Assembly: GCF_001194135.2 (NCBI RefSeq)
Contig: NC_068985.1
Location: 40,378,646 to 40,442,645 of the forward strand
DNA length: 64,000 bases
Reading direction: 5' to 3'
Origin: Octopus bimaculoides
Lineage: Eukaryota
The first letter of the stretch is position 1, and each line of letters begins with the position of its first letter. Positions 4,416 to 62,016 of this stretch are shown here, piece after piece. A program made the position numbers and the translations under genes. The notes beneath the pieces were generated by a model. It searched no databases. It saw only the letters and a list, made by a program, of their open reading frames with translations, and was not told where the DNA came from.

Positions 4416-4574
4416 GCTGTGTGGTAAGAAGCTTGCTTCCCAACCATATAGTTCTGGGTTCAGTACCACTGCATGGCATCATGGGCAAGTATCTTCTACT
4501 ATAGCCTCAGGCCAACCAAAGCCTTGTGAATGGATTTGGTAGACGGAAACTGAAAGAAGCCCATCGTATGTGTA

Positions 4575-4635
<61 letters not shown>

Positions 4636-4823
4636 TTATGTCTTTTTGTCTGTGTTTGTCCCTCCCTACCTCACCATCACTTGATATCCAATGCTGGTGT
4701 GTTTACGTCCCGATAACTTAGCAATTTGGCAAAAGATACCACTTGAATAAGTACTAGGTTTACAAAGAATAAGTCCTGGAGTCGATTTCTTTGACTAAAA
4801 AACCCTTTAAGGCACTGCTCCAG
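4416..4823 (+). mobile_element. tRNA-derived SINE, family A
   Basis: A-box-like gctgtgtggtaag, B-box ggttcagtacc, conserved body (gccttgtgaatggatttggtagacggaaactgaaagaagc), internal (TG)n(TA)n, and the same 3' module as the copies at 6185 and 30744. Confidence 0.9.
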
Positions 4824-5936
4824 CACTAAATTTAATTCTTTAACTGCAAAATTAAATTTCATGGTTATTCCAGTAAGGATGTTTATCTACCAAAAGAATA
4901 CTATTGGACTTTTCTGCTGGTTACATTCCCTCATTAAACTTGATAATCTCAACAAAAAAATAGTTTCAAACATGACATTCCTCAACAAAAGATAGGTTTC
5001 AGTTAAGAATAATGAAATTTTGAGTAGATATATCTGATTTCTACAATAAAAAGGTTAAAACCATAGAGATGTTAGTAAATTTTACCATTTAAATATACTT
5101 AATACAAGCACATTTTGTTATATGTAATATAACTTGAGTCATGACTGTATTAGAAGGGTTTCTTTTTTATATCTGTAATTAAATCGTCTTGGGTCTGGTC
5201 CCATTGTGTGACACTTTGGGCTAGTGTCTTTTACTATAACCTTGCGAGTTAAAGTTGATAGAAACTGTGAATATTCTTAGCAAGCACATTCCTACATTAG
5301 GATAGTAGGGTTAAATCCACCTCTCAGTTTAATACCAAAACCTGTTCTTAGATTTCTTTAGTGGAAGCCACTCTATTATAGGCTTTCAGGCTATTTCTCC
5401 ACTCTGTGGATAAATTTGTTTTCCTTCCTTCCACTAATTTCAGAAGCCTTGGAAAGAGTTATAGGTTCTGCTTCTCCTTTTAATAGCTATAAAAAATATA
5501 TATAAATATATAAATGTATATAAAAATATATCTAATTTACTGGGAGAGAGATGTAGTTGATTAAATGGCCAGGTAGTGGGTGGAAGGTGAGAGAGAGAAG
5601 GAAACTGACTGCTTAGTCATGTGGCAGGAGTGCAGCGTCCACATAGATAACAAGTTAGGGACAACGTTGTAAGAAAGAAAAGTGGTACATTTCTTCTGAC
5701 CCATTATTAATGTCAGGGCCTCAACTGCAGGGGAAATAGAGGAGGATGAATGGCCTTGAATTGAGAAGCTATGGAGCTGGCTTGTCCAGAAAGCAAGGAC
5801 ATTGTAGTAATGGTACAAGTCAGAGAAAACAAATTGCAAATCTGTGAACTAGTAGTTGAAGAATGTTGTGAGTATAGTTTTGCTCATAAGTTGGATGGTC
5901 TTCTTTTAAATGTGGTCCAAGATGGAGCGGGGGGGA

Positions 5937-6054
5937 TGCACATAACCTAATGGTTAGGGTGTTGTACCCACGGTGTGATATTCCTGAACCAGAAAGTTCT
6001 TTGTGTTCCTGAGCAAAACACTTCATCTCATATTGCTCTGTGATTACTTCAACA
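5937..6054 (+). mobile_element. 5' half of an older tRNA-headed SINE, interrupted by the 5S+SINE insertion; probable continuation at about 6599-6730
   Basis: Head taatggttagggtgttg...gtgttcctgagcaaaacacttcat resembles the head at about 44735-44840 (tagtggttagggtgttgg...tgttcttgagcaaaacacttcat). The continuation after 6598 is from recalled family consensus, not verified. Confidence 0.55.
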
Positions 6055-6174
6055 GCTTACGGCCATATCATGTTGAAAGCACCGGTTCTCGTCCGATCAC
6101 CGTAGTTAAGCAACGTTGAGCCTAGTTAGTACTTAGATGGGTGACCACTTGGGAAACCTAGGTGCTGTAAGCAT
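6055..6174 (+). rRNA. 5S: 5S rRNA gene copy, full length and dispersed; probably a retroposed pseudogene
   Basis: About 120 nt, GCTTACGGCCATATC...GGTGCTGTAAGCAT. Helix I GCTTACGGC/GCTGTAAGC; box A AGTTAAGC at +50; loop E TTAGTA; helix V CCTAG/CTAGG; helix IV TGG-GTGA-CCA with a GNRA loop. No oligo(T) terminator follows and there is no tandem array. Confidence 0.93.
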
Positions 6175-6184
6175 CACACACTTA

Positions 6185-6349
6185 GGCGTAGGAGTGGCTG
6201 TTTGGTAAGTAGCTTGCTTATGAACCACATGGTTCCAGGTTCAGTCCCACTGCGTGGCACCTTGGACAAGTGTCTTCTACTATAGCCTCGGGCTAACCAA
6301 AGCCTTGTGAGTGGATTTGGTAGACGGAAACTGAAAGAAGCATGTCGTA

Positions 6350-6390
<41 letters not shown>

Positions 6391-6598
6391 ATATGTTTGT
6401 GTCTGTGTCCCCCAACATCGCTTGACAACTGATGCTGGTGTGTTTACACCCCCATAACTTAGCAGTTCGGCAAAAGAGACCAACAAAATAAGTACTAGGC
6501 TTACAAAGAATAAGTCCTGGGGTCGATTTGCTCGACTAAAGGCAGTGCTCCAGCATGGCCACAGTCAAATGACTGAAACAAGTAAAAGAGTAAAAGAG
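6185..6598 (+). mobile_element. tRNA-derived SINE, family A, full length, 10 nt downstream of the 5S copy
   Basis: Starts ggcgtaggagtggctgtttggtaag, B box ggttcagtccc, internal (TA)n, ends gactgaaacaagtaaaagagtaaaagag; colinear with 30744-31165. Confidence 0.92.
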
Positions 6599-6766
6599 CT
6601 GACATGTGACACACTGTGCACCTGTTCAGGGAACATTTATTTGATAGAATGAGTGAGCTAATGTACAGTACATACATTTGGTCACTATAAACAAATCACT
6701 TCTGCAGGATGTTCAGCAAGAAGTTACAGAATAATTTTTCATGGACTATGAGAGACTATCATTATA

Positions 6767-7572
6767 TGAGATACATTCATTCCTGAAGTTCTGAGGCTTT
6801 TTTTTAGGAGAGGCAGTTATAACTGTCCTAGATTACTGTAATTTTAGTATATATCATTGCTATACTAAGCTGACTTATCAACTTATCTTATTCCAGATTG
6901 AAGGAGACAGCTGTAACAGATGACTAGTTTGCAGAATGCAATCATAGCATGAAGACAATTTGGAAGCTTACTGTGCAATAAAGTTTAGTGCTAAACTGGG
7001 CAAAAATGTTACAGAAACTTATGAAATTCTCCAGCCTGCTTATGGATTAATCTGCAAATGCAGTGCATCTGCTTTTAGCTGGTACAGGAAGCCAGGCAAA
7101 ACAAAGTCTCATGATAATTCCCTTTTTTGACAAGGGCATCATCTACATCCATCGTATTCCTTCTGGCCAGATGGTCAACAAAGAGTACTTTGCAGAGGTT
7201 TTGAGGGAGTTCAGGAAGAGATTTCTTTGCAAAAGCCAGAGTACCAGCACTAGGGCAATACCATCCTGGTCCACAATTCCATCCTGGTAACCAACTACTT
7301 GACAGAGGTAGATATCAAAACTGTCCTTCAGTCCAGACTTTGCCCCCTGGTTGATCAGCAAGTTATAGGAGAAGATGAATAAGGCTGTGACAAGAGTCCT
7401 GGACATCTTCACTTTGGAGGACTTCCATGGGTGCCTTCACAGAGTGGTTGGAGCACTATAGCAAGTGTATTGATGTAAAAGGAACCTCCTTTGAAGGAGA
7501 TTAAAGTTTTGTACTTCTTTGAAATTAATAAATGTCTCTCCTGAAAATGTCTCAAAACTTCTGGAATGGACC

Positions 7573-7614: not shown

Positions 7615-8280
7615 CCCATATACCTAAACAATATTCTGATGTCAGTGTTACATGAGCACTGTAGTAGAAGCAGTACACCAATGCTGATCTTATTTGTTGA
7701 ACTTTGTAGGCTAAAATTAGACTAAGGTTTATTGGGAGTAAAGATATGCTATACGCTAAATATGATTTAGTACTCAAGTACTTTATGGTCAGAGTTCAAT
7801 ATACAGTGATGTAAACATTTTCCAAACCCAAGTAGCAGTTTCCTTAAGCACAATTATTTATAGAATATGTAAGGACTATATATATTTGACTTCTCTCTCT
7901 CTCTCAATGAAAAGAAAATGAGTAAAGTGAAAGCATATGCACAAGTCTACTACTTAACTTCTAACAGAATTGAGGAAAGGGTTATAGTTGTTTAAATCAA
8001 CCCTCAATAAAGAGTTGTAACTGAATCCCAGAAAGTATTTTGTCAGTGCTTACCAATATGTTATTTACCACTTTCCTACAGCTTAACACGGTTAATTTGT
8101 GTGATTTGTCATATCATCATTATTCTAAACTAGTTTAATATTTCATTATTAAACTGTAGCTAACAATTTAATCTCCATTTAGTTCCTAGTATTAATGTAC
8201 ACTAAATTAGTAGTATGTAGGAGTGTGGTTATACTGGAGTCGTATTTCTTTCGTTCTTAAATTCAGCATACGGTTCATTC

Positions 8281-8677
8281 TTTTACTCTTCTACTTGTTT
8301 CAGTCATTTGATTGCGACCATGCTGGAGCACCACCTTTAATCGAGCAAATCAACCCCAGGACTTATTATTTGTAAGCCTAGTACTTATTCTATCGGTCTC
8401 TTTTGCTGAACCGCTAGGTTACGGGGGACGTAAACACACCACCATCAGTAGTCAAGCAATGGTGGGGGGGACAAACACAGACACACAAACATATACACAC
8501 ATACATATATACGACAGGCTTCTTTCAGTTTCCATCTTTCAAATCCACTCACAAGGCTTTGGTCGGTCCGAGGTTATGGTAGAAGACACTTGCCCAAGTT
8601 GCCATGCAGTGGGAATGAACCCAGAACCGTATGGTTGATAAGCAAGCTACTTACCACACAGCCACTCCTGTGCCTAT
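8281..8677 (-). mobile_element. tRNA-derived SINE, family A, full length, reverse strand
   Basis: Reverse complement matches 6185-6598 from head (ataggcacaggagtggctgtgtggtaag) to tail. Confidence 0.9.
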
Positions 8678-8828: not shown

Positions 8829-8917
8829 AGGTATATATTATATATACACAGCAAAAGTAATGCCCTTTTTTGATTTATTAACTTTTATTGAACAAACATA
8901 AATTACAGTATTCTTTC

Positions 8918-9118
8918 TTTTATTCTTTTACTTGTTTCAGTCATTTGACTGCACCTGTGCTGAAGCACCGCTTTGAAGGACCTTCTTTTTTTTAAAGCAT
9001 AGTACTTATTCTATCAGTCACTTTTGCCAAACCACTAAGTTATGGGGATATAAACACACCAACACCAGTTGTCAAGCAGTGATGGGGGGACAAACACAAA
9101 TACACACATACATATATA
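8918..9118 (-). mobile_element. 3' half of a family A SINE
   Basis: cttgtttcagtcatttgactgc...gataataaacacacc-type and ttgtcaagcagtgatgggggg sequence matches the 3' module; the head is missing. Confidence 0.8.
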
Positions 9119-9563
9119 TATCACACTTTCTGATCAAAATATAATCTTTGAGATGCCAGTCCTTAAATCTTGGGTGCATTCAGGTGGCTTTATATTTATT
9201 TTTCTGCTTAAACAGAATATTGGTAACAACCAGATTATTCTCAGTACAAAACATCTAAAAGAACTACTACATTTTTATTACATGGGGTTGAGAGGACTTC
9301 TTTGTTTTGATGAGGACATGGTAACTTCTCCAAAATATGTACTAAGACAGAATGTACCTAGTACACTCTGCAAAGTAGCCAACGTTATAAAGGGTCTAAA
9401 GCCATAGAAACCAAGCCCAAAATAAAATATATGAGCAAGATGAGAGTTTCTGATCCATGCAGTAGTGCAGTAACTTTGAGTAAGAACTGATTCTGACTGG
9501 TAAAACTTGCCCAACCCAGATTAGCATGACAGTAGATGTAAAATGATGATGATGATGATGATG

Positions 9564-21454: not shown

Positions 21455-21610
21455 AAAAAATATATATACATACATATATATATACACATATACATATATA
21501 TAAACACATATATACATATATATATACATACACATGTATATATAAACACACATATATATATATACATATATATACATATATATACATACATATATATACA
21601 AATACACATG

Positions 21611-21644
<34 letters not shown>

Positions 21645-21665
21645 CAAATACACATACATATATGC
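21455..21665 (+). repeat. Compound TA/CA microsatellite, continuing across the gap as (TA)n at 22211-22276
   Basis: Directly visible low-complexity tatatatacacata array flanking an N gap. Confidence 0.95.
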
Positions 21666-22210
21666 CCTTCCNNNNNNNNNNNNNNNNNNNNNNNNNNNNN
21701 NNNNNNNNNNNNNNNNNNNNNNNNNNNNNNNNNNNNNNNNNNNNNNNNNNNNNNNNNNNNNNNNNNNNNNNNNNNNNNNNNNNNNNNNNNNNNNNNNNNN
21801 NNNNNNNNNNNNNNNNNNNNNNNNNNNNNNNNNNNNNNNNNNNNNNNNNNNNNNNNNNNNNNNNNNNNNNNNNNNNNNNNNNNNNNNNNNNNNNNNNNNN
21901 NNNNNNNNNNNNNNNNNNNNNNNNNNNNNNNNNNNNNNNNNNNNNNNNNNNNNNNNNNNNNNNNNNNNNNNNNNNNNNNNNNNNNNNNNNNNNNNNNNNN
22001 NNNNNNNNNNNNNNNNNNNNNNNNNNNNNNNNNNNNNNNNNNNNNNNNNNNNNNNNNNNNNNNNNNNNNNNNNNNNNNNNNNNNNNNNNNNNNNNNNNNN
22101 NNNNNNNNNNNNNNNNNNNNNNNNNNNNNNNNNNNNNNNNNNNNNNNNNNNNNNNNNNNNNNNNNNNNNNNNNNNNNNNNNNNNNNNNNNNNNNNNNNNN
22201 NNNNNNNNNN

Positions 22211-29932: not shown

Positions 29933-30743
29933 TAGATTAGAATCCTACAAATCAGATATCCACCTTCCTATAGATATTTGAGTGTGATAAGTATGTAATG
30001 ACATAAAACCTAAATTTAATTGCAAAGATCATGCTAACTAGAGGATTGCACAGGAATGTCTTCTCCAAACTCTATTTTCAACTCCTGCAAACAGGAGGGG
30101 GTTGAAAATGAAAACTATCCCCATACTCTAAATTTGAGATGTACTTGTGTAAGAAACCAATATTAGAGTACACAGTAGTTTGACAGAATCAGGAGAACCC
30201 CCAAGCAAGATATAGTATTCGATTCATCACTATATATACTGAGCTCAAATCTCACTATAGTCAATTTTGTCTTCATCCTTTCGGTGGTTGATAAAATTTG
30301 TACCAATCAAGTACTGAAGTTGAGTTAAATTAATATATTTATGACCCCAAAATGCCAATATGAGAAATCAATATTTCAATACTACAACTGACTATAGTAG
30401 CCAACTGTTCTAGTCTATTTTCCGCCAATGATAGACTATGAGCCACTAATCATTGGTTGGTTGTACAATGATCTATCAACTCCAATGTCCATTCTTTGAT
30501 TTGTATCAAAGAGACCATGAAACAATGCAGGTAAAGGCAGGGAGTCTACAATGATTGGATAATTACTCATGATCTATAACAAGGACTTGAGTTAGGTTCA
30601 ATAAAAGTTGAGTAAGAAGCTGTCAAAAACAAAGCAATTGTTTACAACAATAGTTAACAATTACTGCTAGCTTTCTGTGATTGTCAGGAACAGTTACAAA
30701 GAATTACCATGAGATTTACATAAAATTGTAAGCAACAATTATA

Positions 30744-30905
30744 GGCGCAGGAGTGGCTGTATGGTAAGTAGCTTGCTTACTAGCCACATGGTTCCAGGTT
30801 CAGTCCCACTGCATGGCACCTTGGGCAAGTGTCTTCTACTATAGCCTCAGGCTGACCAAAGCCTTGTGAGCGGATTTGGTAGACAGAAACTGAAAGAAGC
30901 CTGCC

Positions 30906-30955
<50 letters not shown>

Positions 30956-31165
30956 ATGCGTGCATGCGTGCGTGCATTTGTCCCTCCACCCACCATCGCT
31001 GGACAACCAATGTTGGTGTGTTTACATCCCCATAACTTAGCAGTTTAGCAAAAGGGACCAATAGAATAAGTACCAGGCTTACAAAGAATAAGTCCTGGAG
31101 GTCAATCTGTTCAACTAAAGGCGGTACTCCAGCATGGCCACAGTCAAATGACTGAAACAAAGAAA
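30744..31165 (+). mobile_element. tRNA-derived SINE, family A, full length
   Basis: ggcgcaggagtggctgtatggtaag head, internal (TG)n, gactgaaacaaag tail. Confidence 0.92.
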
Positions 31166-32120
31166 AAAGAAAAAAAACCAGTTGCTAAGAATTACAGCTA
31201 GGTTTTTGCTGTCTTTCTCCAACTAAGGTAGAAATTTCAGTCAATTGGGAATATTTCTGATGTACATTATTCAGTTGTCTTTTTATCATTATCATTGTCT
31301 GAAGATCATAGGTTTAGATGAAGCAGACCACTATTTTAAAGATGTTAGTAAGTTTGTTGAAGATTTGATAGCTGTATTGAACAAGGTGAGGAATGACAAA
31401 AAAGCCATTTGAGGTTCGAGAATTAATAAGCTAACTGACCTACTAGAAGAATGTACAGAAATATCTAGTTGTGCAGACCTGTTCAACCCATGGAAACATG
31501 ATGAAGATCAGAGTTGAGAAGAATAAAAGATAGTAAGCAGAAGATGATTTCAAAGACAAAAAAGAAATAGCAAAAAGATACACTGACAGGGCGTCAACAG
31601 GAAGTTGTACAAACAATGCAGTAACTGTATTGAGTGTGTGAATAAGAAGTCTTGTAGACGGAATGACACCTGCATGTTGGAACAGTTATTGTATATTATG
31701 AAAACGTTTTTTCAATCTAGAAAAATCTAGAAACATGTTTGTGTTTATCTATGTAAGGGTGTTTGTCATCTCTTCACTGAGGACAGAACTAAGGTCAATG
31801 GTTGAAAAGAAAATAAGATACTGTGAGGATGAATAGAAAATAGTTCACATCTGTAAGTTATCAATAATACTGAAACAGAAATCTATTATAGCAGAAACAA
31901 ACCATACTACCACCACTATTCACCCAACATTACTTCCAATTTTCAATCTACCGCTAAGTTTCCAAAACTCCAAAACTTATAACTATTATTTTTCTACATA
32001 TGGACTCACTCAACATGTCTCTTTGTTCTGTTTTTTTAAATACTGCAGTTACCACACAACCTTTCTTTTATATAGCTTATCTGTGAAAGAAGCTTATTGA
32101 TATAATAACCTCCACCTCAC

Positions 32121-37370: not shown

Positions 37371-38634
37371 GTAAACAATTCAGGTGGAAGTGGAAGTAAG
37401 CATGTGTGTGAATCATAGTTTCTTACATTCCTTCATAGTTTCAATTTCTTGGAAAAACATTCATCTGAAAACATTTATTTTTTAGGAAAACACTTTTTTG
37501 TAAAAGAAACTATTTTCACCTTCATTTTTACTTTCATAGGAGGCAAACGGTAAGATGGCAACGAAAGTATTCTTGTTTCTTGCTATCTTTTATTATCTTT
37601 TTACACTTCTGAAAACTTTTTGCACTACAAATTTTATTCTCACTTCACATTTAAACAACATTCACTCTGGTAAAAAAAAAAAAAAAACCAAAGACTTTAA
37701 GCAATAAAAGAAACAATGAGTAGAAACTTGCTGAGAAAGAATGAGAGAACACAGACAAGAAATAAAAAGGAGTCAAAAATCATTGGTAAATAAGAGCCAA
37801 CATGAGCAAGCACATATAAATGGGATACCTAAAATATCAGCGCAAAAGACAAATACAAAGAAAGAACATAGATAATGAACAACAAGTTGATTATATGCAA
37901 CAACATCAAGAGTTAAGTGCATCAAAGTAATGAACTTCAAGAAAGGAAAAAAGTCTGACAAGAAAAACATAAGGGCAGAACAGTTGCTTGATTTGAGAAA
38001 TATTCAAACAAGAAGACAATATCAGAGACAAATTTTGTGTTGCTATGATACACCATCAAAATGAACTTTTTTTTTTGTGTTTTCAATAATTTCAATCCAT
38101 AGTCTGGCTCAGGCATGAGCAGCCCTTTACAAAAAGTGGTTCACATGAGACATAGCTCATTATGAAGTAGGCCACACACTAAAAAAATTTTGTTTAAATG
38201 TATCATTCAAAAAGCCCCACAGGCCATAGCTTGCCCATGACTGGTCTAGGTCATTATCATAAGAATCTTCAGTGTAATGAAACAATATAGTAAAGATTAT
38301 ATAAATTCATGCATCAAAAGTAAAGACGGTTATAATTTTGGTTGAATTTCCAAGGTCTCATGAGTTATCATCTACTGTTGTCCCACTGAAAATATTATCT
38401 CCAAAAAAAAAAAAAAAAAAAAAAAAGAGTGCTATGCTGTAGCAAATCAACTCTAAACAGAGTAGCATTAAGTGGGGTATTACTTTGAATGCACACACAC
38501 ATATAAATACTTTACAGAAAATAGAGGAAATCTAGAATGCAGAATAGCTGTGAAAACAACTTAAAAGATCAGGTAAATACCCTTTGAAGACAGAAAAAGG
38601 TGGCCAGCAAGCCACTACAAAAAATATATGTATG

Positions 38635-38676
<42 letters not shown>

Positions 38677-39023
38677 GAAGGTAGGATGGGGATAAAGAGA
38701 GAGTTGATGTATGATTCACACTTCAGGAAAACAAGCACATACAAATGAGAAACTTGGAGAAGCAAAAGCGAAAATCAACAGCTTCAACAAAATAAGTAGC
38801 ATTTTTCCTTCTGTCTAGACATTTGTGCAGTGCATGCATGTGCATCTGTGTGTGTGTGTACACGCACACATGCATGTGCATGCACACACGTACTTGTACT
38901 GCTGTTTGCCAAATCTGATTGTTAGCAATTATTAGGGAGAATTGCTTTTTCAATGTGGATGTCCTTTTACTGTTACTGTGGAAGATAGGGTACATCTCAC
39001 CAGACAGACTAAGGCAAGCATAT

Positions 39024-41818: not shown

Positions 41819-42190
41819 TCACAGGAATGGCTGTGTGGTAAGAAGTTTGCTTCCCAGCCACATGGTTCTGGGTTCAGTCCCACTGAGTGGCACCTTGAGC
41901 GTCTTCTATTATAGCTTTGGGTTGACCAAAGCTTTGAGAGTCAATTTGGTAGACAGAAATTGAAAGTCTGTCATGTGTGTGTGAGAGTGTTTGTTCATAT
42001 CTGTGCTCCCACCACTATTTGACAACCAGTGTTGGTGTGTTTACATCCCCATAGCTTAGCAGTCCAGCAAAAAAACCGTTAGAATAATTACCAGGCTTTA
42101 AAAAAATAAGTACTAAGATTCATTCAGTCAACTAAAATTTCTCAAGATAGTGCCCCAGCATAGCCACAGACTAATGACTAAAACAAGACA
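41819..42190 (+). mobile_element. tRNA-derived SINE, family A variant with divergent 3' part
   Basis: cacaggaatggctgtgtggtaagaag head and shared body; the 3' module carries extra sequence (aaaaaataagtactaagattcattcagtcaactaaaatttctcaag). Confidence 0.85.
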
Positions 42191-44525: not shown

Positions 44526-44734
44526 AGAAAAATAGAAAGTGATTGAGAGGGAGAAAATGATTGCATCTTTATGTTTTTGTGTGTGCAAAAAGAGAACAAA
44601 GAGTATTCAATACATGTAACAGAATTGCATTAACTTAGATTTCAGTCAATATCAGACCGGGTCATATCATCACTCCTCAGAGTTTACCCATGCTTATGCA
44701 TTTGGTCAGAAATAACCCTTTGTCGTGAGTGTTG

Positions 44735-44885
44735 AGGTGCATGACTTAGTGGTTAGGGTGTTGGATTCATGATCATAAGATTGTGATTTCAATTCCTGGA
44801 CTGAGTAATGCATTGTTCTTGAGCAAAACACTTCATTTAACATTGTTTCAGTCCACTCAGCTGGCAAAAATGAGTATTTCTGCAA
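44735..44885 (+). mobile_element. 5' portion of a tRNA-headed SINE (family C-like)
   Basis: ggtgcatgacttagtggttagggtg...gtgatttcaattcct head, similar to the head of the minus-strand copy at 61625-62016. Confidence 0.7.
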
Positions 44886-47800
44886 TGTACCATTGTCCCA
44901 TCCACTGGGGAGTATATATGCCGGAGAATCCAGGAAACTGGCCCTATAAGCCTATATGACTATGTGCATATGTATGTGTGAGGGGAATGCTTCTTTCAGT
45001 TTCCACCCACCAAATCCAATCACAAGGCTTCGGTTAGCTTGAGAATATTGTAGAAGAGACCAGCCCAAAACCATATAGTTCCCAAACACACATCCACATC
45101 TGCACCTTCATGAGTAGGAAGTCGTTCAGTTGGTTAAACTACTGAATGCTCATGGTCAAGACTGAAAAATCCACCAATGAGTCATGAGACAAATTAGCCA
45201 AATAAAAATGTTGATTAATAATTTAATGCTATATTTAAATATATCTCCCAATAAAATTTCCTGCAGAGCAAAATTTTCCACACTCCCACCTACCCAATAT
45301 TTCTTTATAAGATTTAAGGTGATTTTTAAAACAAGTTTTGTCTGTGTTGTTGATTTTTAAAAATGTCCAACATATAATTATATTAGCCAAAAATAATGTT
45401 TAAACTATTCCAGATAAATTCCAAATGAGCAATTAGATTTTCATGATTAATTTAAGAAAATGGAATAATGTGTCCTGCTATGCAAAGTATAGTAACTAAC
45501 CATTTATCTTGTAAAGTATATATAAAAATAGTAAAGTTAAAAACAAAATAGCAGAAAAATAGATTCTAGTATCCAGTTTGAGAAAGAGAAAGTGGTTTGG
45601 CATACAGGAGTCATGTCAGTAGCCTGTTGTTCTCTTCTATTTCAGATTGTTGCTTATATTGTTTAATATCACTCACAAATGTAATGTTTGGTATCTACAG
45701 GCTATCTGAATAGTTGATAACCCAAACATTTTTGGAGTAGTTACCTAAATAACTGACAGTAATTAGTAACAAGATGGTAAAATTAATAGAGATAATGAAA
45801 AGTAGTTGTTAATGAGGGTGGATATAGACAGTTCCAAAGATGTATAGTTTTGTGATGAGGAAGATTATAAAAAGTAGTACATGAAGTACCCAGGAACACA
45901 GCGTGAACACAATAAGGGTATTAAGAGGAGGAGAAACAGGTGGGATGAGGGAAATGGCTCAATGTGGCAATCACATACAATCAAATTAAGAGGTGAAGCT
46001 CACTATTATAACAGTAATGTAGGAGAGTCAGATTACAAATCAGCAACAAGTGAATTAATTGAGATATGAGAGAAAAGGTTTATCATACAATGAAAAATAT
46101 GACTGTTTTGGATGAGAACAATTTCCTAGCTATGTAAGAAGTACTGTATTGGATATACATTTTGGAGCTGAAGTATTTGCAGGTCCTGAAAACATAACCA
46201 ATCTCTTGTGATACAACCTTAACTATGAAGTTCTTATGTAAATGCTTCGAAAGGTCATTAGAACTAGTGAAGCCTAGCACTTGTAAGAAGATTGAATGAT
46301 ATTAAGTTGTCATCTTTACATTGCAGAATGCTTTTGAAGTTTCTATTTATAGAGGGCATATATATATATATATATATATATGATTATCAAGAAATGTGGA
46401 GGTAACACCTAGATGATTCCTAAGTGCAAAAAAAGGGAGGGGTAGTCTAAAGCATTTGTTTAGAGGTGAGAAAGTCTGAGTCATGAAGGTAGTGATTAAA
46501 GGGCATTGGAAAGATATTCAACTGAAGTACATACTAGTTGATGGAATGTGAAAGTACCATCACTATGAGCTGTATTTGAAGCAACAGGAGAAAAACTAAG
46601 CAATTCATATCATTAAGATTGAGAAGAGCCTAAAAAAAATATTTAAAAAAAAGGTAGCTTTACATAAGTTTTCATGCCAGATATAACCAACAGCTTTCCA
46701 GGTACCAAGGGTAATCTGCTTTCATCAAAACTTTCAAGATGAAGTAAACCTTATGGCATTAGAGAAAATCTCCAGCAGATCTGGTTTTGTGAGAGTCATG
46801 CTCATGATTATCAAGAAGTGAAAGAAATTTGAGGTGGTTAAAAAGGTAATAACTTATAATTGTTTCATTTACTTTAGAGACATTGGAAGTGAAATCAATA
46901 CGATCAGAGTTGACAATATATTTTGTTCTTTGTTTAGGTATACTACACACTGTTATGTGCTTTCATATCTTATACATAGAAAACAAGAATAACAATTTTA
47001 GTAATGATATAAGTTGTAACAGGAGTATATCAAGCAAAACCATCTGAACTAGTTACTTTGTAAGGCTTAAGTGACCAAAGACTTACCAAAATTTGTGGCT
47101 GTATATATGTTGTGCACTGAAGAATGGATGATGAGAAAGAATAGGAGTGTCCATATGCACAATGTGGGATTGTGGTTATTTCTGGTACATTTATTACTTA
47201 CAGAGCCATCTAGATTAAATTTGGTAATACACTTGAAGTTTCTGTAAAGTTGGCTGAGGGCCTTTTACCAACAATCTCATAATGACTAAAACAATTTTAC
47301 TTTCACACATTATCATTATTCTTCAGTGACCAAAAATTGGGTAAGTTCTATAACTATTGGTTGAAAAGAAAATCAAGGGACAGCTACAGAATCTCTGAGA
47401 TTTGTATTGCTCTTTAGTGCTCTTTAAACAAATGCTGTGAGTTGCAATAGATTGTTCGAATGATGTAAAAGAGTGCTTGCAAATTTCTCTTTTTTAGTTT
47501 GTAAGGCCATATTTGAATATATTTATCACATCTATGCTTCATTACTCCTAGTTTAGAGTTCAAGTCCTACCAGAATCAACTGATTTTTGTATCTGGATTG
47601 TACACCTTCCATTCAAGAATTGACCTTGTGTTTAAGAAAGCAGTTGTTAATCACACAAAGATGATGGAAAAGCAAATTTTTCTCTTCAAGCCTTCTTCTG
47701 ACATTTTTGACAGGATCTGTATTTTTTTTTTTTTTTTTCATATATTTACTGTTTAACATTCACTATTTGATAGTTGGAATGGTCTATTTGTTTGTTTTTA

Positions 47801-61624: not shown

Positions 61625-62016
61625 TGTTGTTGTTGTTGTTGGCACTCCGTCGCTTACAACGTTGAGGGCTCCAGTTGATCTGATCAACGGAACAGCCTGC
61701 TCGTGAAATTAATGTGCAAGTGGCTGAGCAATCCACAGACACGTGTACCCTTAATGTAGTTCTCAGGGATATTCAGCGTGACACAGTGTGACAAGGCTGG
61801 CCCTTTGAAATATAGGTACAACAGAAACAGGAAGAAAGAGTGAGAGAAAGTTGTGGTGGAAGAGTACAGCAGGGTTCGCCACCATCTCCTGCCGGAGCCT
61901 CGAGGAGCTTTAGGTGTTTTCGCTCAATAAACACTCACAACGCCTGGTCTGGGAATCGAAACCACGATCCTATGACCACGAGTCTGCTGCCATAACCACT
62001 GGGCCATTGCACCTCC
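61625..62016 (-). mobile_element. tRNA-derived SINE, family C, full length with (CAA)n tail
   Basis: Minus strand begins ggaggtgcaatggcccagtggtt...gtggtttcgattccc (A and B boxes) and ends ...gacggagtgccaacaacaacaac. Confidence 0.9.

What the first reader, a model, noticed from the sequence alone, without database searches (positions are those of the whole stretch)
5937..6730. 5S rRNA fused to a full-length tRNA-SINE: candidate 5S-headed composite retroposon (SINE3-like)
Seen: a 120-nt 5S copy with all helices base-paired, no oligo(T) terminator, only 10 nt (cacacactta) before a complete family A SINE, and no run of four or more T anywhere from 6055 to 6598 (first T4 at about 6735). A Pol III transcript started on the 5S internal promoter could therefore read through the entire SINE. 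The trinucleotide gct occurs at the 5S 5' end (6055-6057) and again at 6598-6600, as a microhomology or mini-TSD. Known: 5S-derived SINE3 heads exist in fish, amniotes and some insects, and small-RNA/retroelement chimeras arise by template switching (e.g. U6-L1). Inference: 5S+SINE inserted as one unit into an older SINE whose 5' half is 5937-6054 and whose 3' half resumes at about 6599. That would be either a one-off chimera or a member of a 5S-headed SINE family that I do not know to be described in cephalopods. Caveat: box C has A where G81 is usual, which may weaken TFIIIA binding.
Basis: partly seen in the sequence, partly recalled or inferred. Interest (0 to 1): 0.72.

Follow-up and report, generated by a model that had tools for sequence, protein, structure and literature searches.

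The report
5S rRNA copy fused to SINE
A complete 5S ribosomal RNA copy sits 10 bases upstream of a complete octopus-type SINE and most likely arrived with it as one retroposed unit; this kind of mobile-element chimera is already known, so the finding is real but fairly ordinary.

Summary
Window 6055-6173 is a full-length 5S rRNA copy (Rfam 114.9 bits, 34/34 model pairs canonical). It has no T-run terminator. Ten bases later (6184-6598) lies a complete copy of the window's commonest SINE, and the first T4+ run is at 6735.

The left flank (5940-6035) is a decayed second SINE. The right flank shows no detectable similarity to that SINE, so the "empty site" is unproven. The shared "gct" is chance-level, and no target-site duplication flanks the unit. 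A 7-mer (ACACACT) brackets the SINE alone at p≈0.035, but it is misplaced by 10 nt.

Circumstantial evidence favours one event. Chance adjacency is about 6e-4. The SINE copy is the youngest in the window, and the 5S is undecayed.

No cephalopod genome could be reached, so copy number is unknown. The literature already reports about 24,000 5S-derived loci in giant squid, four "SINE/5S" families (9.8 Mb) in Octopus vulgaris, a 5S-headed SINE in a scaphopod, and the 5S+tRNA composite AmnSINE1.

Verdict: probably a template-switch 5S–SINE retrocopy, either a lone chimera or a family member. It is a new member of a known kind, of modest interest.

The parts
5940..6054 (+). 5' part (tRNA-like head plus CORE-like motif) of an older, decayed SINE of a second family ('family B'). 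It forms the left flank of the insertion.
   Evidence: 5940-6035 aligns to the family B copy at 44715-44960 with local score 34 against shuffles 9.6±1.5. 6036-6054 cannot be assigned.
6055..6173 (+). Full-length 5S rRNA copy
   Evidence: RF00001, 114.9 bits, model 1-120, E=1.3e-24. 34/34 model pairs are canonical. It is the only 5S in the window, even at E<=10.
6174..6183 (+). 10-nt spacer TCACACACTT between the 5S 3' end and the SINE head. Its origin is unknown (non-templated or 5'-extended SINE RNA, or target DNA). There is no oligo(T).
   Evidence: Sequence. Alignment of SINE copies starts at 6183/6184.
6184..6598 (+). Complete copy of the window's main SINE ('family A'). By eye: box A-like TGGCTGTTTGG at 6195-6205, box B-like GGTTCAGTCCC at 6238-6248, CORE-like CCTTGGACAAGT at about 6260, internal (TA)n(TG)n at about 6347-6408, and tail GTAAAAGAGTAAAAGAG at 6582-6598.
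   Evidence: BLAST and MAFFT against copies at 8279-8676(-), 30742-31174(+), 4416-4799(+) and 41823-42187(+). It is the least diverged copy: 11/264 = 4.2% private differences. ARAGORN and Rfam do not call a tRNA in it.
6176..6182 (+). ACACACT, the upstream copy of a 7-nt direct repeat. It is a candidate TSD for an independent SINE insertion.
   Evidence: The chance frequency of such a repeat in this window is 0.035.
6609..6615 (+). ACACACT, the downstream copy. It lies 10 nt beyond the SINE tail.
6599..6734 (+). Right flank of unknown origin, with no T4 run. It would be included in any read-through transcript.
   Evidence: No match elsewhere in the window. No significant similarity to family B.
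6735..6739 (+). First T-run (T5) downstream of the 5S start. It is the first canonical Pol III stop.

Best explanation
The 544-bp block 6055-6598 is one retroposed unit: a full 5S rRNA copy joined head-to-tail, in the same orientation, to a complete family A SINE. Inferred mechanism: the reverse transcriptase of the SINE's LINE partner primed on the SINE tail and copied the SINE RNA to (or within 1-3 nt of) its 5' end. It then added or copied about 10 further nucleotides, jumped to the 3' end of a mature 5S rRNA, and copied that to its first base. The cDNA was joined to the target inside an old, decayed SINE. Either this locus is that primary chimera, or it is a daughter copy of a 5S-headed SINE family that arose this way. 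I put these two at roughly even odds. Because the 5S lacks its oligo(T) terminator and no T4 occurs before 6735, a Pol III transcript started from the 5S internal promoter could run through the whole SINE and its tail. Such a transcript would be retroposition-competent in principle. Shown: the anatomy, the integrity of both parts, and the absence of terminators. Inferred: co-insertion, template switching, and transcription.
For: (1) Both parts are complete, in the same orientation, and 10 nt apart. (2) Chance adjacency is unlikely. There are 5 family A heads in 64 kb, which gives about 6e-4 for a same-strand head starting within 15 nt downstream of a given point (inference). (3) The ages agree. 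The SINE copy is the least diverged in the window at 4.2%, and the 5S has 34/34 canonical pairs. Simulation gives 17% for that outcome at 4.2% divergence, 3.7% at 8% and 0.07% at 17%. Both parts are therefore young, whereas the left-flank SINE is old (about 69% identity to its relative). (4) The 5S ends at its mature 3' end with at most one T, as expected for a copy of processed RNA rather than of a gene with its terminator. (5) The other family A copies have A/T-rich sequence directly upstream of the head, while the focal copy has 5S plus a CA-rich spacer. (6) The mechanism and the product type are documented. [quoted passage not shown] Small-RNA chimeric retrogenes are known from Buzdin 2003 (cited) and 5S/LINE-1 chimeras. 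(7) 5S-derived repeats are abundant in cephalopods: about 24,000 loci in giant squid, and four 'SINE/5S' families covering 9.83 Mb in O. vulgaris.
Against: No target-site duplication of 6 nt or more flanks the unit, and the shared 'gct' is chance-level. The right flank cannot be shown to continue the left-flank SINE, so a clean empty site is unproven. The 10-nt spacer is longer than the few non-templated bases usual at template jumps. A 7-mer ACACACT brackets the SINE alone. There is only one 5S among five SINE heads in the window, and no second copy of the junction was seen anywhere. The O. vulgaris '5S' class may partly be tandem 5S rDNA: its 7 'recent insertions' average about 6 kb each.
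Confidence: 0.6

Rival explanations
1. Two independent insertions. A 5S retropseudogene was already present in the old SINE, and a family A SINE later inserted 2-10 nt downstream of it (or the reverse order), each event with its own target-site duplication.
For: The 7-nt direct repeat ACACACT at 6176-6182 and 6609-6615 brackets the SINE but not the 5S. No TSD exists for the whole unit. SINEs make up about 11.7% of an octopus genome, so nesting is common.
Against: The repeat is expected by chance at 3.5% of equivalent positions, and several boundary pairs were tried. Its downstream copy lies 10 nt past the tail, and those 10 nt match no other copy's 3' end. The prior for a same-strand SINE head within 15 nt of a given point is about 6e-4. 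The two parts appear similarly young.
Confidence: 0.2
2. An orphan but genuine 5S rRNA gene whose terminator region was hit by a SINE insertion. The 5S would then be genomic, not retroposed.
For: The 5S is structurally perfect and carries protostome-type internal control regions. The 14-mer GTTAAGCAACGTTG of its box A region also turns up in seven papers on filarial and other nematode parasites; I take it to be their 5S rDNA PCR primer, from my own knowledge, as those papers were not opened.
Against: At most one T remains between the 5S and the SINE, and no T-run is duplicated after the SINE tail. There is no other 5S within 64 kb, so it is not part of an array. The 5S begins exactly at base 1 inside a decayed SINE, which is the signature of a retrocopy rather than of a gene with its own 5' flank.
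Confidence: 0.05
3. A DNA-level rearrangement or assembly chimera juxtaposed unrelated sequences.
For: The window contains assembly gaps (an N-run next to the SINE copy at about 8720). Repeats are prone to misassembly.
Against: There are no Ns or coverage-type breaks in 5900-6800. Both junctions fall precisely at the natural ends of the 5S (base 1, base 119/120) and of the SINE (head, tail). That is expected of RNA-templated joining, not of random breakage.
Confidence: 0.05

Closest known systems
AmnSINE1 / SINE3-type Deu-SINEs with composite 5S + tRNA heads (Nishihara et al. 2006; Kapitonov & Jurka 2003), as summarised in PMC4824008 and PMC4758252
   Same: A 5S rRNA sequence is fused to the 5' end of a tRNA-derived SINE. 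The proposed origin is a reverse-transcriptase template switch from a SINE RNA to 5S rRNA. The 5S internal promoter is able to drive the composite.
   Different: [quoted passage not shown] Here both the 5S (119 nt) and the tRNA-like head with its A and B boxes are complete, which corresponds to the hypothetical starting state. The body here carries a CORE-like motif rather than a demonstrated Deu domain. Amplification is not shown.
Bipartite chimeric retrogenes made by template switching: U6/L1, 5S/L1 and small RNA + Alu (Buzdin et al. 2003; Law & Burns 2025 preprint)
   Same: A small Pol III RNA at the 5' side is joined in sense to a retroelement copy that ends in its normal tail.
   Different: Human 5S/L1 chimeras are mostly antisense and have a truncated 5S. 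Here the 5S is sense and complete. Human chimeras show 7-17 bp TSDs, and none is seen here. The partner here is a SINE mobilised by a non-L1 LINE of unknown type.
Ante, a 5S-headed CORE+V SINE of the scaphopod Antalis entalis (Luchetti & Mantovani 2016, PMC5804259)
   Same: It is a mollusc SINE with a 5S-derived head and a CORE-type body.
   Different: Ante has no tRNA-like module between the 5S head and the body, and it is a demonstrated multi-copy family. It comes from a different class of molluscs, and sequence relatedness was not tested.
'SINE/5S' families in the Octopus vulgaris repeat library (Bonar et al. 2026, PMC13282606) and the ~24,000 5S-derived loci of Architeuthis dux (PMC6962438)
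   Same: These are 5S-derived interspersed repeats in cephalopods. In O. vulgaris there are 4 families covering 9.83 Mb (0.35% of the genome), which predicts about 0.4 copies of a 540-bp element per 64 kb, close to the one seen here.
   Different: Neither paper gives consensus sequences or structures, so identity with this composite cannot be checked. Part of that class may be tandem 5S rDNA.

Membership tests
5S rRNA (Rfam RF00001) | Covariance-model score above the gathering threshold over the full model | tested here: met
   114.9 bits against 38, model positions 1-120
5S rRNA (Rfam RF00001) | All consensus helices able to pair | tested here: met
   34/34 pairs canonical, 29 WC and 5 GU
Functional 5S rRNA gene (Pol III type 1) | Oligo(T) terminator directly after position about 120 | tested here: not met
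   The 5S is followed by TCACACACTT; the first T4+ run is at 6735
Functional 5S rRNA gene (Pol III type 1) | Internal control region (box A, IE, box C) compatible with TFIIIA | tested here: inconclusive
   All three regions align to the model. Differences from vertebrate box C (A81, U88, A93, U95) preserve pairing. Binding itself is not testable here.
Functional 5S rRNA gene (Pol III type 1) | Tandem-array or conserved gene context | tested here: not met
   No other 5S in 64 kb at E<=10. The copy is embedded in a decayed SINE.
SINE3 / 5S-headed SINE (SINEBase criteria, PMC3531059) | Short (<1 kb) interspersed element | tested here: met
   544 bp, 6055-6598
SINE3 / 5S-headed SINE (SINEBase criteria, PMC3531059) | At least 60% identity to 5S rRNA over at least 60 nt at the 5' end | tested here: met
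   Full-length 5S match at the 5' end of the unit; criteria quoted
SINE3 / 5S-headed SINE (SINEBase criteria, PMC3531059) | Extra body and LINE-type tail beyond the RNA-derived head | tested here: met
   The family A SINE body and GTAAAAGA-repeat tail follow the 5S
SINE3 / 5S-headed SINE (SINEBase criteria, PMC3531059) | [quoted passage not shown] | not testable with these tools
   One copy in the window. No cephalopod DNA was found in the protein, metagenome, GTDB or viral collections.
SINE3 / 5S-headed SINE (SINEBase criteria, PMC3531059) | Diagnostic substitutions in the head relative to the cellular 5S rRNA | not testable with these tools
   No octopus 5S rDNA reference was available
Template-switch chimeric retrogene (Buzdin type) | A small Pol III RNA copy at the 5' side, in sense, joined to a retroelement copy that ends in its tail | tested here: met
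Template-switch chimeric retrogene (Buzdin type) | Target-site duplication flanking the whole chimera | tested here: not met
   No shared k-mer of 6 nt or more between 6000-6060 and 6590-6700; only 'gct'
Template-switch chimeric retrogene (Buzdin type) | Uninterrupted target sequence when the chimera is removed (empty site) | tested here: inconclusive
   The left flank is SINE-derived; the right flank is not detectably so. No orthologous locus was available.
AmnSINE1-type composite head | 5S fused upstream of a tRNA-derived SINE head | tested here: met
   A- and B-box-like motifs seen by eye at 6195-6205 and 6238-6248
AmnSINE1-type composite head | Partial loss of the tRNA region, and a Deu domain in the body | tested here: not met
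   The tRNA-like head is complete relative to other copies. The body shows a CORE-like CCTTGGRCAAGT motif (recognised from memory); a Deu domain was not tested.

The most novel reading that the evidence does not exclude
This locus is a copy, or even a source copy, of a young 5S-headed composite SINE that is amplifying in octopus. In it, a complete 5S gene (type 1 promoter) and a complete tRNA-like head (type 2 promoter) coexist. That would be the still-intact first stage of the route that produced AmnSINE1/SINE3, caught before the tRNA part decays. It would account for part of the uncharacterised 'SINE/5S' class in octopus and possibly the many 5S-derived loci of squid.
Probability: 0.25. Interest if true: 0.5.

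Novelty: new member of a known kind. Interest (0 to 1): 0.3.

Why it matters
If the junction recurs at many loci, it would give a sequence-level description of a 5S-headed SINE in cephalopods. These are so far only counted, not characterised. It would also be a rare example of the intact starting state of a 5S+tRNA composite SINE, useful for testing how SINE heads are exchanged by template switching. If it is unique, it is one more small-RNA/retroelement chimera. It would then show only that the octopus LINE machinery template-switches onto 5S rRNA.

Tried and rejected
1. I tried to reach octopus DNA through spurious ORFs. The 84-aa ORF on the SINE's reverse strand gave one unrelated ENA hit, and its contig L001 has no similarity to the region. 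Exact look-ups of two window ORFs returned nothing.

2. The metagenome scan with TAAGCAN{4,20}GGAGTGGCTGT was too loose. 

3. GTDB and viral scans with an octopus-type 5S 23-mer and a SINE 26-base pattern returned 0 hits.

4. A full-text search for five sequence strings found no cephalopod paper; the only hits, for one 5S string, were seven papers on filarial and other nematode parasites.

5. I considered a conserved A/T-rich 'leader' upstream of family A heads, with (TG)TAAGCA microhomology to the 5S 3' end. I rejected it because pairwise upstream similarity is not above composition-matched shuffles (p=0.06-1.0). The focal/c30742 8-mer (p=0.014) does not survive ten comparisons.

6. I considered a tripartite chimera (family B head + 5S + SINE). 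No repeat flanks 5850-5950 and 6590-6700.

7. Continuity of the old SINE across the insertion was not significant.

8. I tried dating the 5S by structural integrity. It is compatible with the SINE's 4.2% divergence but does not discriminate between hypotheses.

9. Walker & Doolittle 1983, Albertin 2015 and Buzdin 2003 are not held in the library.

Full report
**What is there.**
- The sequence 5400-7300 was read directly. A gathering-threshold Rfam scan of the whole window finds exactly one RNA family hit: 5S rRNA at 6055-6173 on the + strand. It covers model positions 1-120 at 114.9 bits (threshold 38), with no non-canonical pair flagged.
- Parsing that alignment gives 34 of 34 model pairs canonical, 29 Watson-Crick and 5 G:U. 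The MFE fold reproduces the three-arm 5S shape.
- The copy is followed by TCACACACTT (6174-6183), not by an oligo(T).
- A regex scan shows no run of four or more T from 6055 to 6734. The first is T5 at 6735-6739.
- Local BLAST of 6174-6600 against the window aligns 6183-6597 end to end with two copies at 82-83% identity: 8279-8676 on the minus strand and 30742-31174 on the plus strand. It also matches older copies at 4416-4799 and 41823-42187 and a 5'-truncated copy at 8916-9121.
- The focal SINE ('family A') is therefore complete from its tRNA-like head to its GTAAAAGA-repeat tail. ARAGORN and Rfam do not call the head as a tRNA; the A- and B-box-like motifs are my reading of the sequence.

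**The box C caveat.** A81 is present, but in the fold it pairs with a U. From my own knowledge of the Xenopus 5S, the four differences in 80-97 (A81, U88, A93, U95) include the covarying partners G81:C95→A:U and U84:G93→U:A. The Drosophila 5S, recalled from memory, also has A81/U95. The box A string GTTAAGCAACGTTG also occurs in seven papers on filarial and other nematode parasites; I take it to be their 5S rDNA primer, from my own knowledge, since I did not open them. The 5S therefore looks like a faithful copy of a normal protostome-type 5S rRNA, not a damaged one.

**The flanks.**
- The left flank 5940-6035 is significantly similar to a second tRNA/CORE-like SINE ('family B') at 44715-44960. 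The local score is 34 against 9.6±1.5 for shuffles, at about 69% identity. The 5S thus begins inside, or at the end of, an old SINE fragment.
- The right flank 6598-6740 matches nothing else in the window. It scores at shuffle level against family B (10 against 9.8±1.5).
- The tempting CAGCTGRCA match across the joined flanks is also at shuffle level (alignment). The claim that the old SINE resumes at 6599 is therefore unproven rather than disproven, because the window holds only one informative family B copy.

**Target-site duplications.**
- No k-mer of 6 nt or more is shared between the 60-90 nt upstream of 6055 and the 100 nt downstream of 6598. The 'gct' at both ends is a 3-nt match of no weight.
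- The 7-mer ACACACT occurs at 6176-6182, inside the spacer, and again at 6609-6615. It would bracket the SINE alone.
- In this window, a 20-nt and a 30-nt piece 415 nt apart share a 7-mer 3.5% of the time. I tested several boundary pairs. The downstream copy lies 10 nt beyond the tail, and those 10 nt resemble no other copy's 3' end.
- I treat this as a weak pointer to two events.
- Only one other copy (30742) shows a convincing TSD, 13/15 nt. Absent or unclear TSDs are therefore common in this small sample.

**Arguments for one event.**
- There are five family A heads in the 64 kb. This gives roughly 6e-4 for a same-strand head starting within 15 nt downstream of any given point (my inference). 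Chance adjacency to the only 5S in the window is thus unlikely.
- The focal SINE is the least diverged copy, with 11 private differences in 264 well-supported columns, or 4.2%. The other copies range from 5.5% to 27%.
- A simulation shows that a 5S of the same age keeps all 34 pairs 17% of the time. The figure drops to 3.7% at 8% divergence and 0.07% at 17%. Both parts are therefore young and the left-flank SINE is old, which is compatible with simultaneous arrival but does not prove it.
- The 5S ends at its mature 3' terminus with at most one T, as a copy of processed RNA would.
- The junctions fall exactly at the natural ends of both RNAs.
- The other four family A copies have A/T-rich DNA directly upstream of the head; the focal one does not.

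**An idea I dropped.** The other copies seemed to share an A/T-rich 'leader' ending in (TG)TAAGCA, identical to the 5S 3' end. That would have implied a microhomology-guided switch. Composition-matched shuffles show that the upstream similarities are not significant (p=0.06-1.0). The single 8-mer match (p=0.014) does not survive ten comparisons.

**Family or one-off.**
- This cannot be decided here. The 5S is unique in the window even at E<=10, and none of the other four heads has one.
- No cephalopod DNA could be reached by any route:
  - The protein collection does not hold SINE-derived ORFs of this genome.
  - My metagenome pattern was too loose and returned only chance hits.
  - The GTDB and viral scans were empty.
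- The literature changes the prior:
  - The giant squid genome paper reports about 24,000 loci derived from 5S rRNA and suggests that many are SINEs.
  - The curated O. vulgaris repeat annotation lists a SINE class '5S' with four consensus families covering 9,831,953 bp, one of them with recent insertions.
  - A coverage of 0.35% predicts about 225 bp per 64 kb, the same order as the one element seen here.
- Two cautions apply. A composite consensus would also attract ordinary family A copies. The seven 'recent' insertions average about 6 kb, which looks more like tandem 5S rDNA.
- I put lone chimera against family copy at about even odds.

**Comparison with what is known.**
[quoted passage not shown] It differs in that neither module has yet decayed.
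- It also fits the class of small-RNA chimeric retrogenes (Buzdin 2003; 5S/LINE-1 chimeras). However, human 5S chimeras are mostly antisense and truncated and carry TSDs.
- A 5S-headed CORE+V SINE (Ante) is already described in a mollusc.
- By the SINEBase criteria, the unit meets the tests for size, head identity and body/tail. The copy-number and diagnostic-substitution criteria could not be tested.
- It fails the tests for a functional 5S gene, having neither a terminator nor an array context.

**Verdict.** The feature is real. It is most likely a single retroposed 5S–SINE unit made by template switching (0.6), and less likely two adjacent insertions (0.2). It is a new member of a known kind. 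Interest is modest unless genome-wide searches show it to be an amplifying family whose two promoters are both still intact.

Noticed in passing
window 7099-7236 (+), within ORF 7063-7290: A decayed mariner-type transposase fragment about 500 bp downstream of the finding. Pfam Transposase_1 (PF01359) matches at E=0.0019 and 18.5 bits, below the cut-off of 24. The frame is broken by stops further on.
   Followed up: partly
window 30693-30707 and 31180-31194, flanking the SINE copy at 30742-31174: This copy has a 13/15-nt direct repeat (GTTACAAAGAATTAC / GTTGCTAAGAATTAC). Its upstream member lies about 35 nt before the tRNA-like head, which suggests a 5'-extended transcript or a longer subfamily. 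A conserved 'leader' across copies was not statistically supported.
   Followed up: partly
window ~8720 onward (upstream of the minus-strand SINE copy 8279-8676): An assembly gap (run of N) begins 47 nt beyond the 5' end of this SINE copy, so its 5' flank and TSD cannot be read.
   Followed up: no
window 4566-4635, 21463-21667, 38605-38899, 6322-6411 and others: The (TG)n/(TA)n microsatellites, including the one inside every family A SINE, give sub-threshold Rfam matches to mir-297, mir-466, mir-1277 and mir-3149 (30-50 bits against thresholds of 80-100). These are low-complexity artefacts, not miRNA genes.
   Followed up: yes
window 44715-44960 (+) and 61914-62015 (-): There are at least two further tRNA-like/CORE-like SINE families besides family A. 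The copy at 44715 abuts an inverted family A fragment at 44987-45068.
   Followed up: partly
window 6202 (box A-like motif of the focal SINE): The focal SINE has a private G>T transversion inside its box A-like motif (TGGCTGTGTGG to TGGCTGTTTGG). If the 5S promoter drives the unit, loss of the tRNA-type box A would be tolerated. This is speculation only.
   Followed up: no
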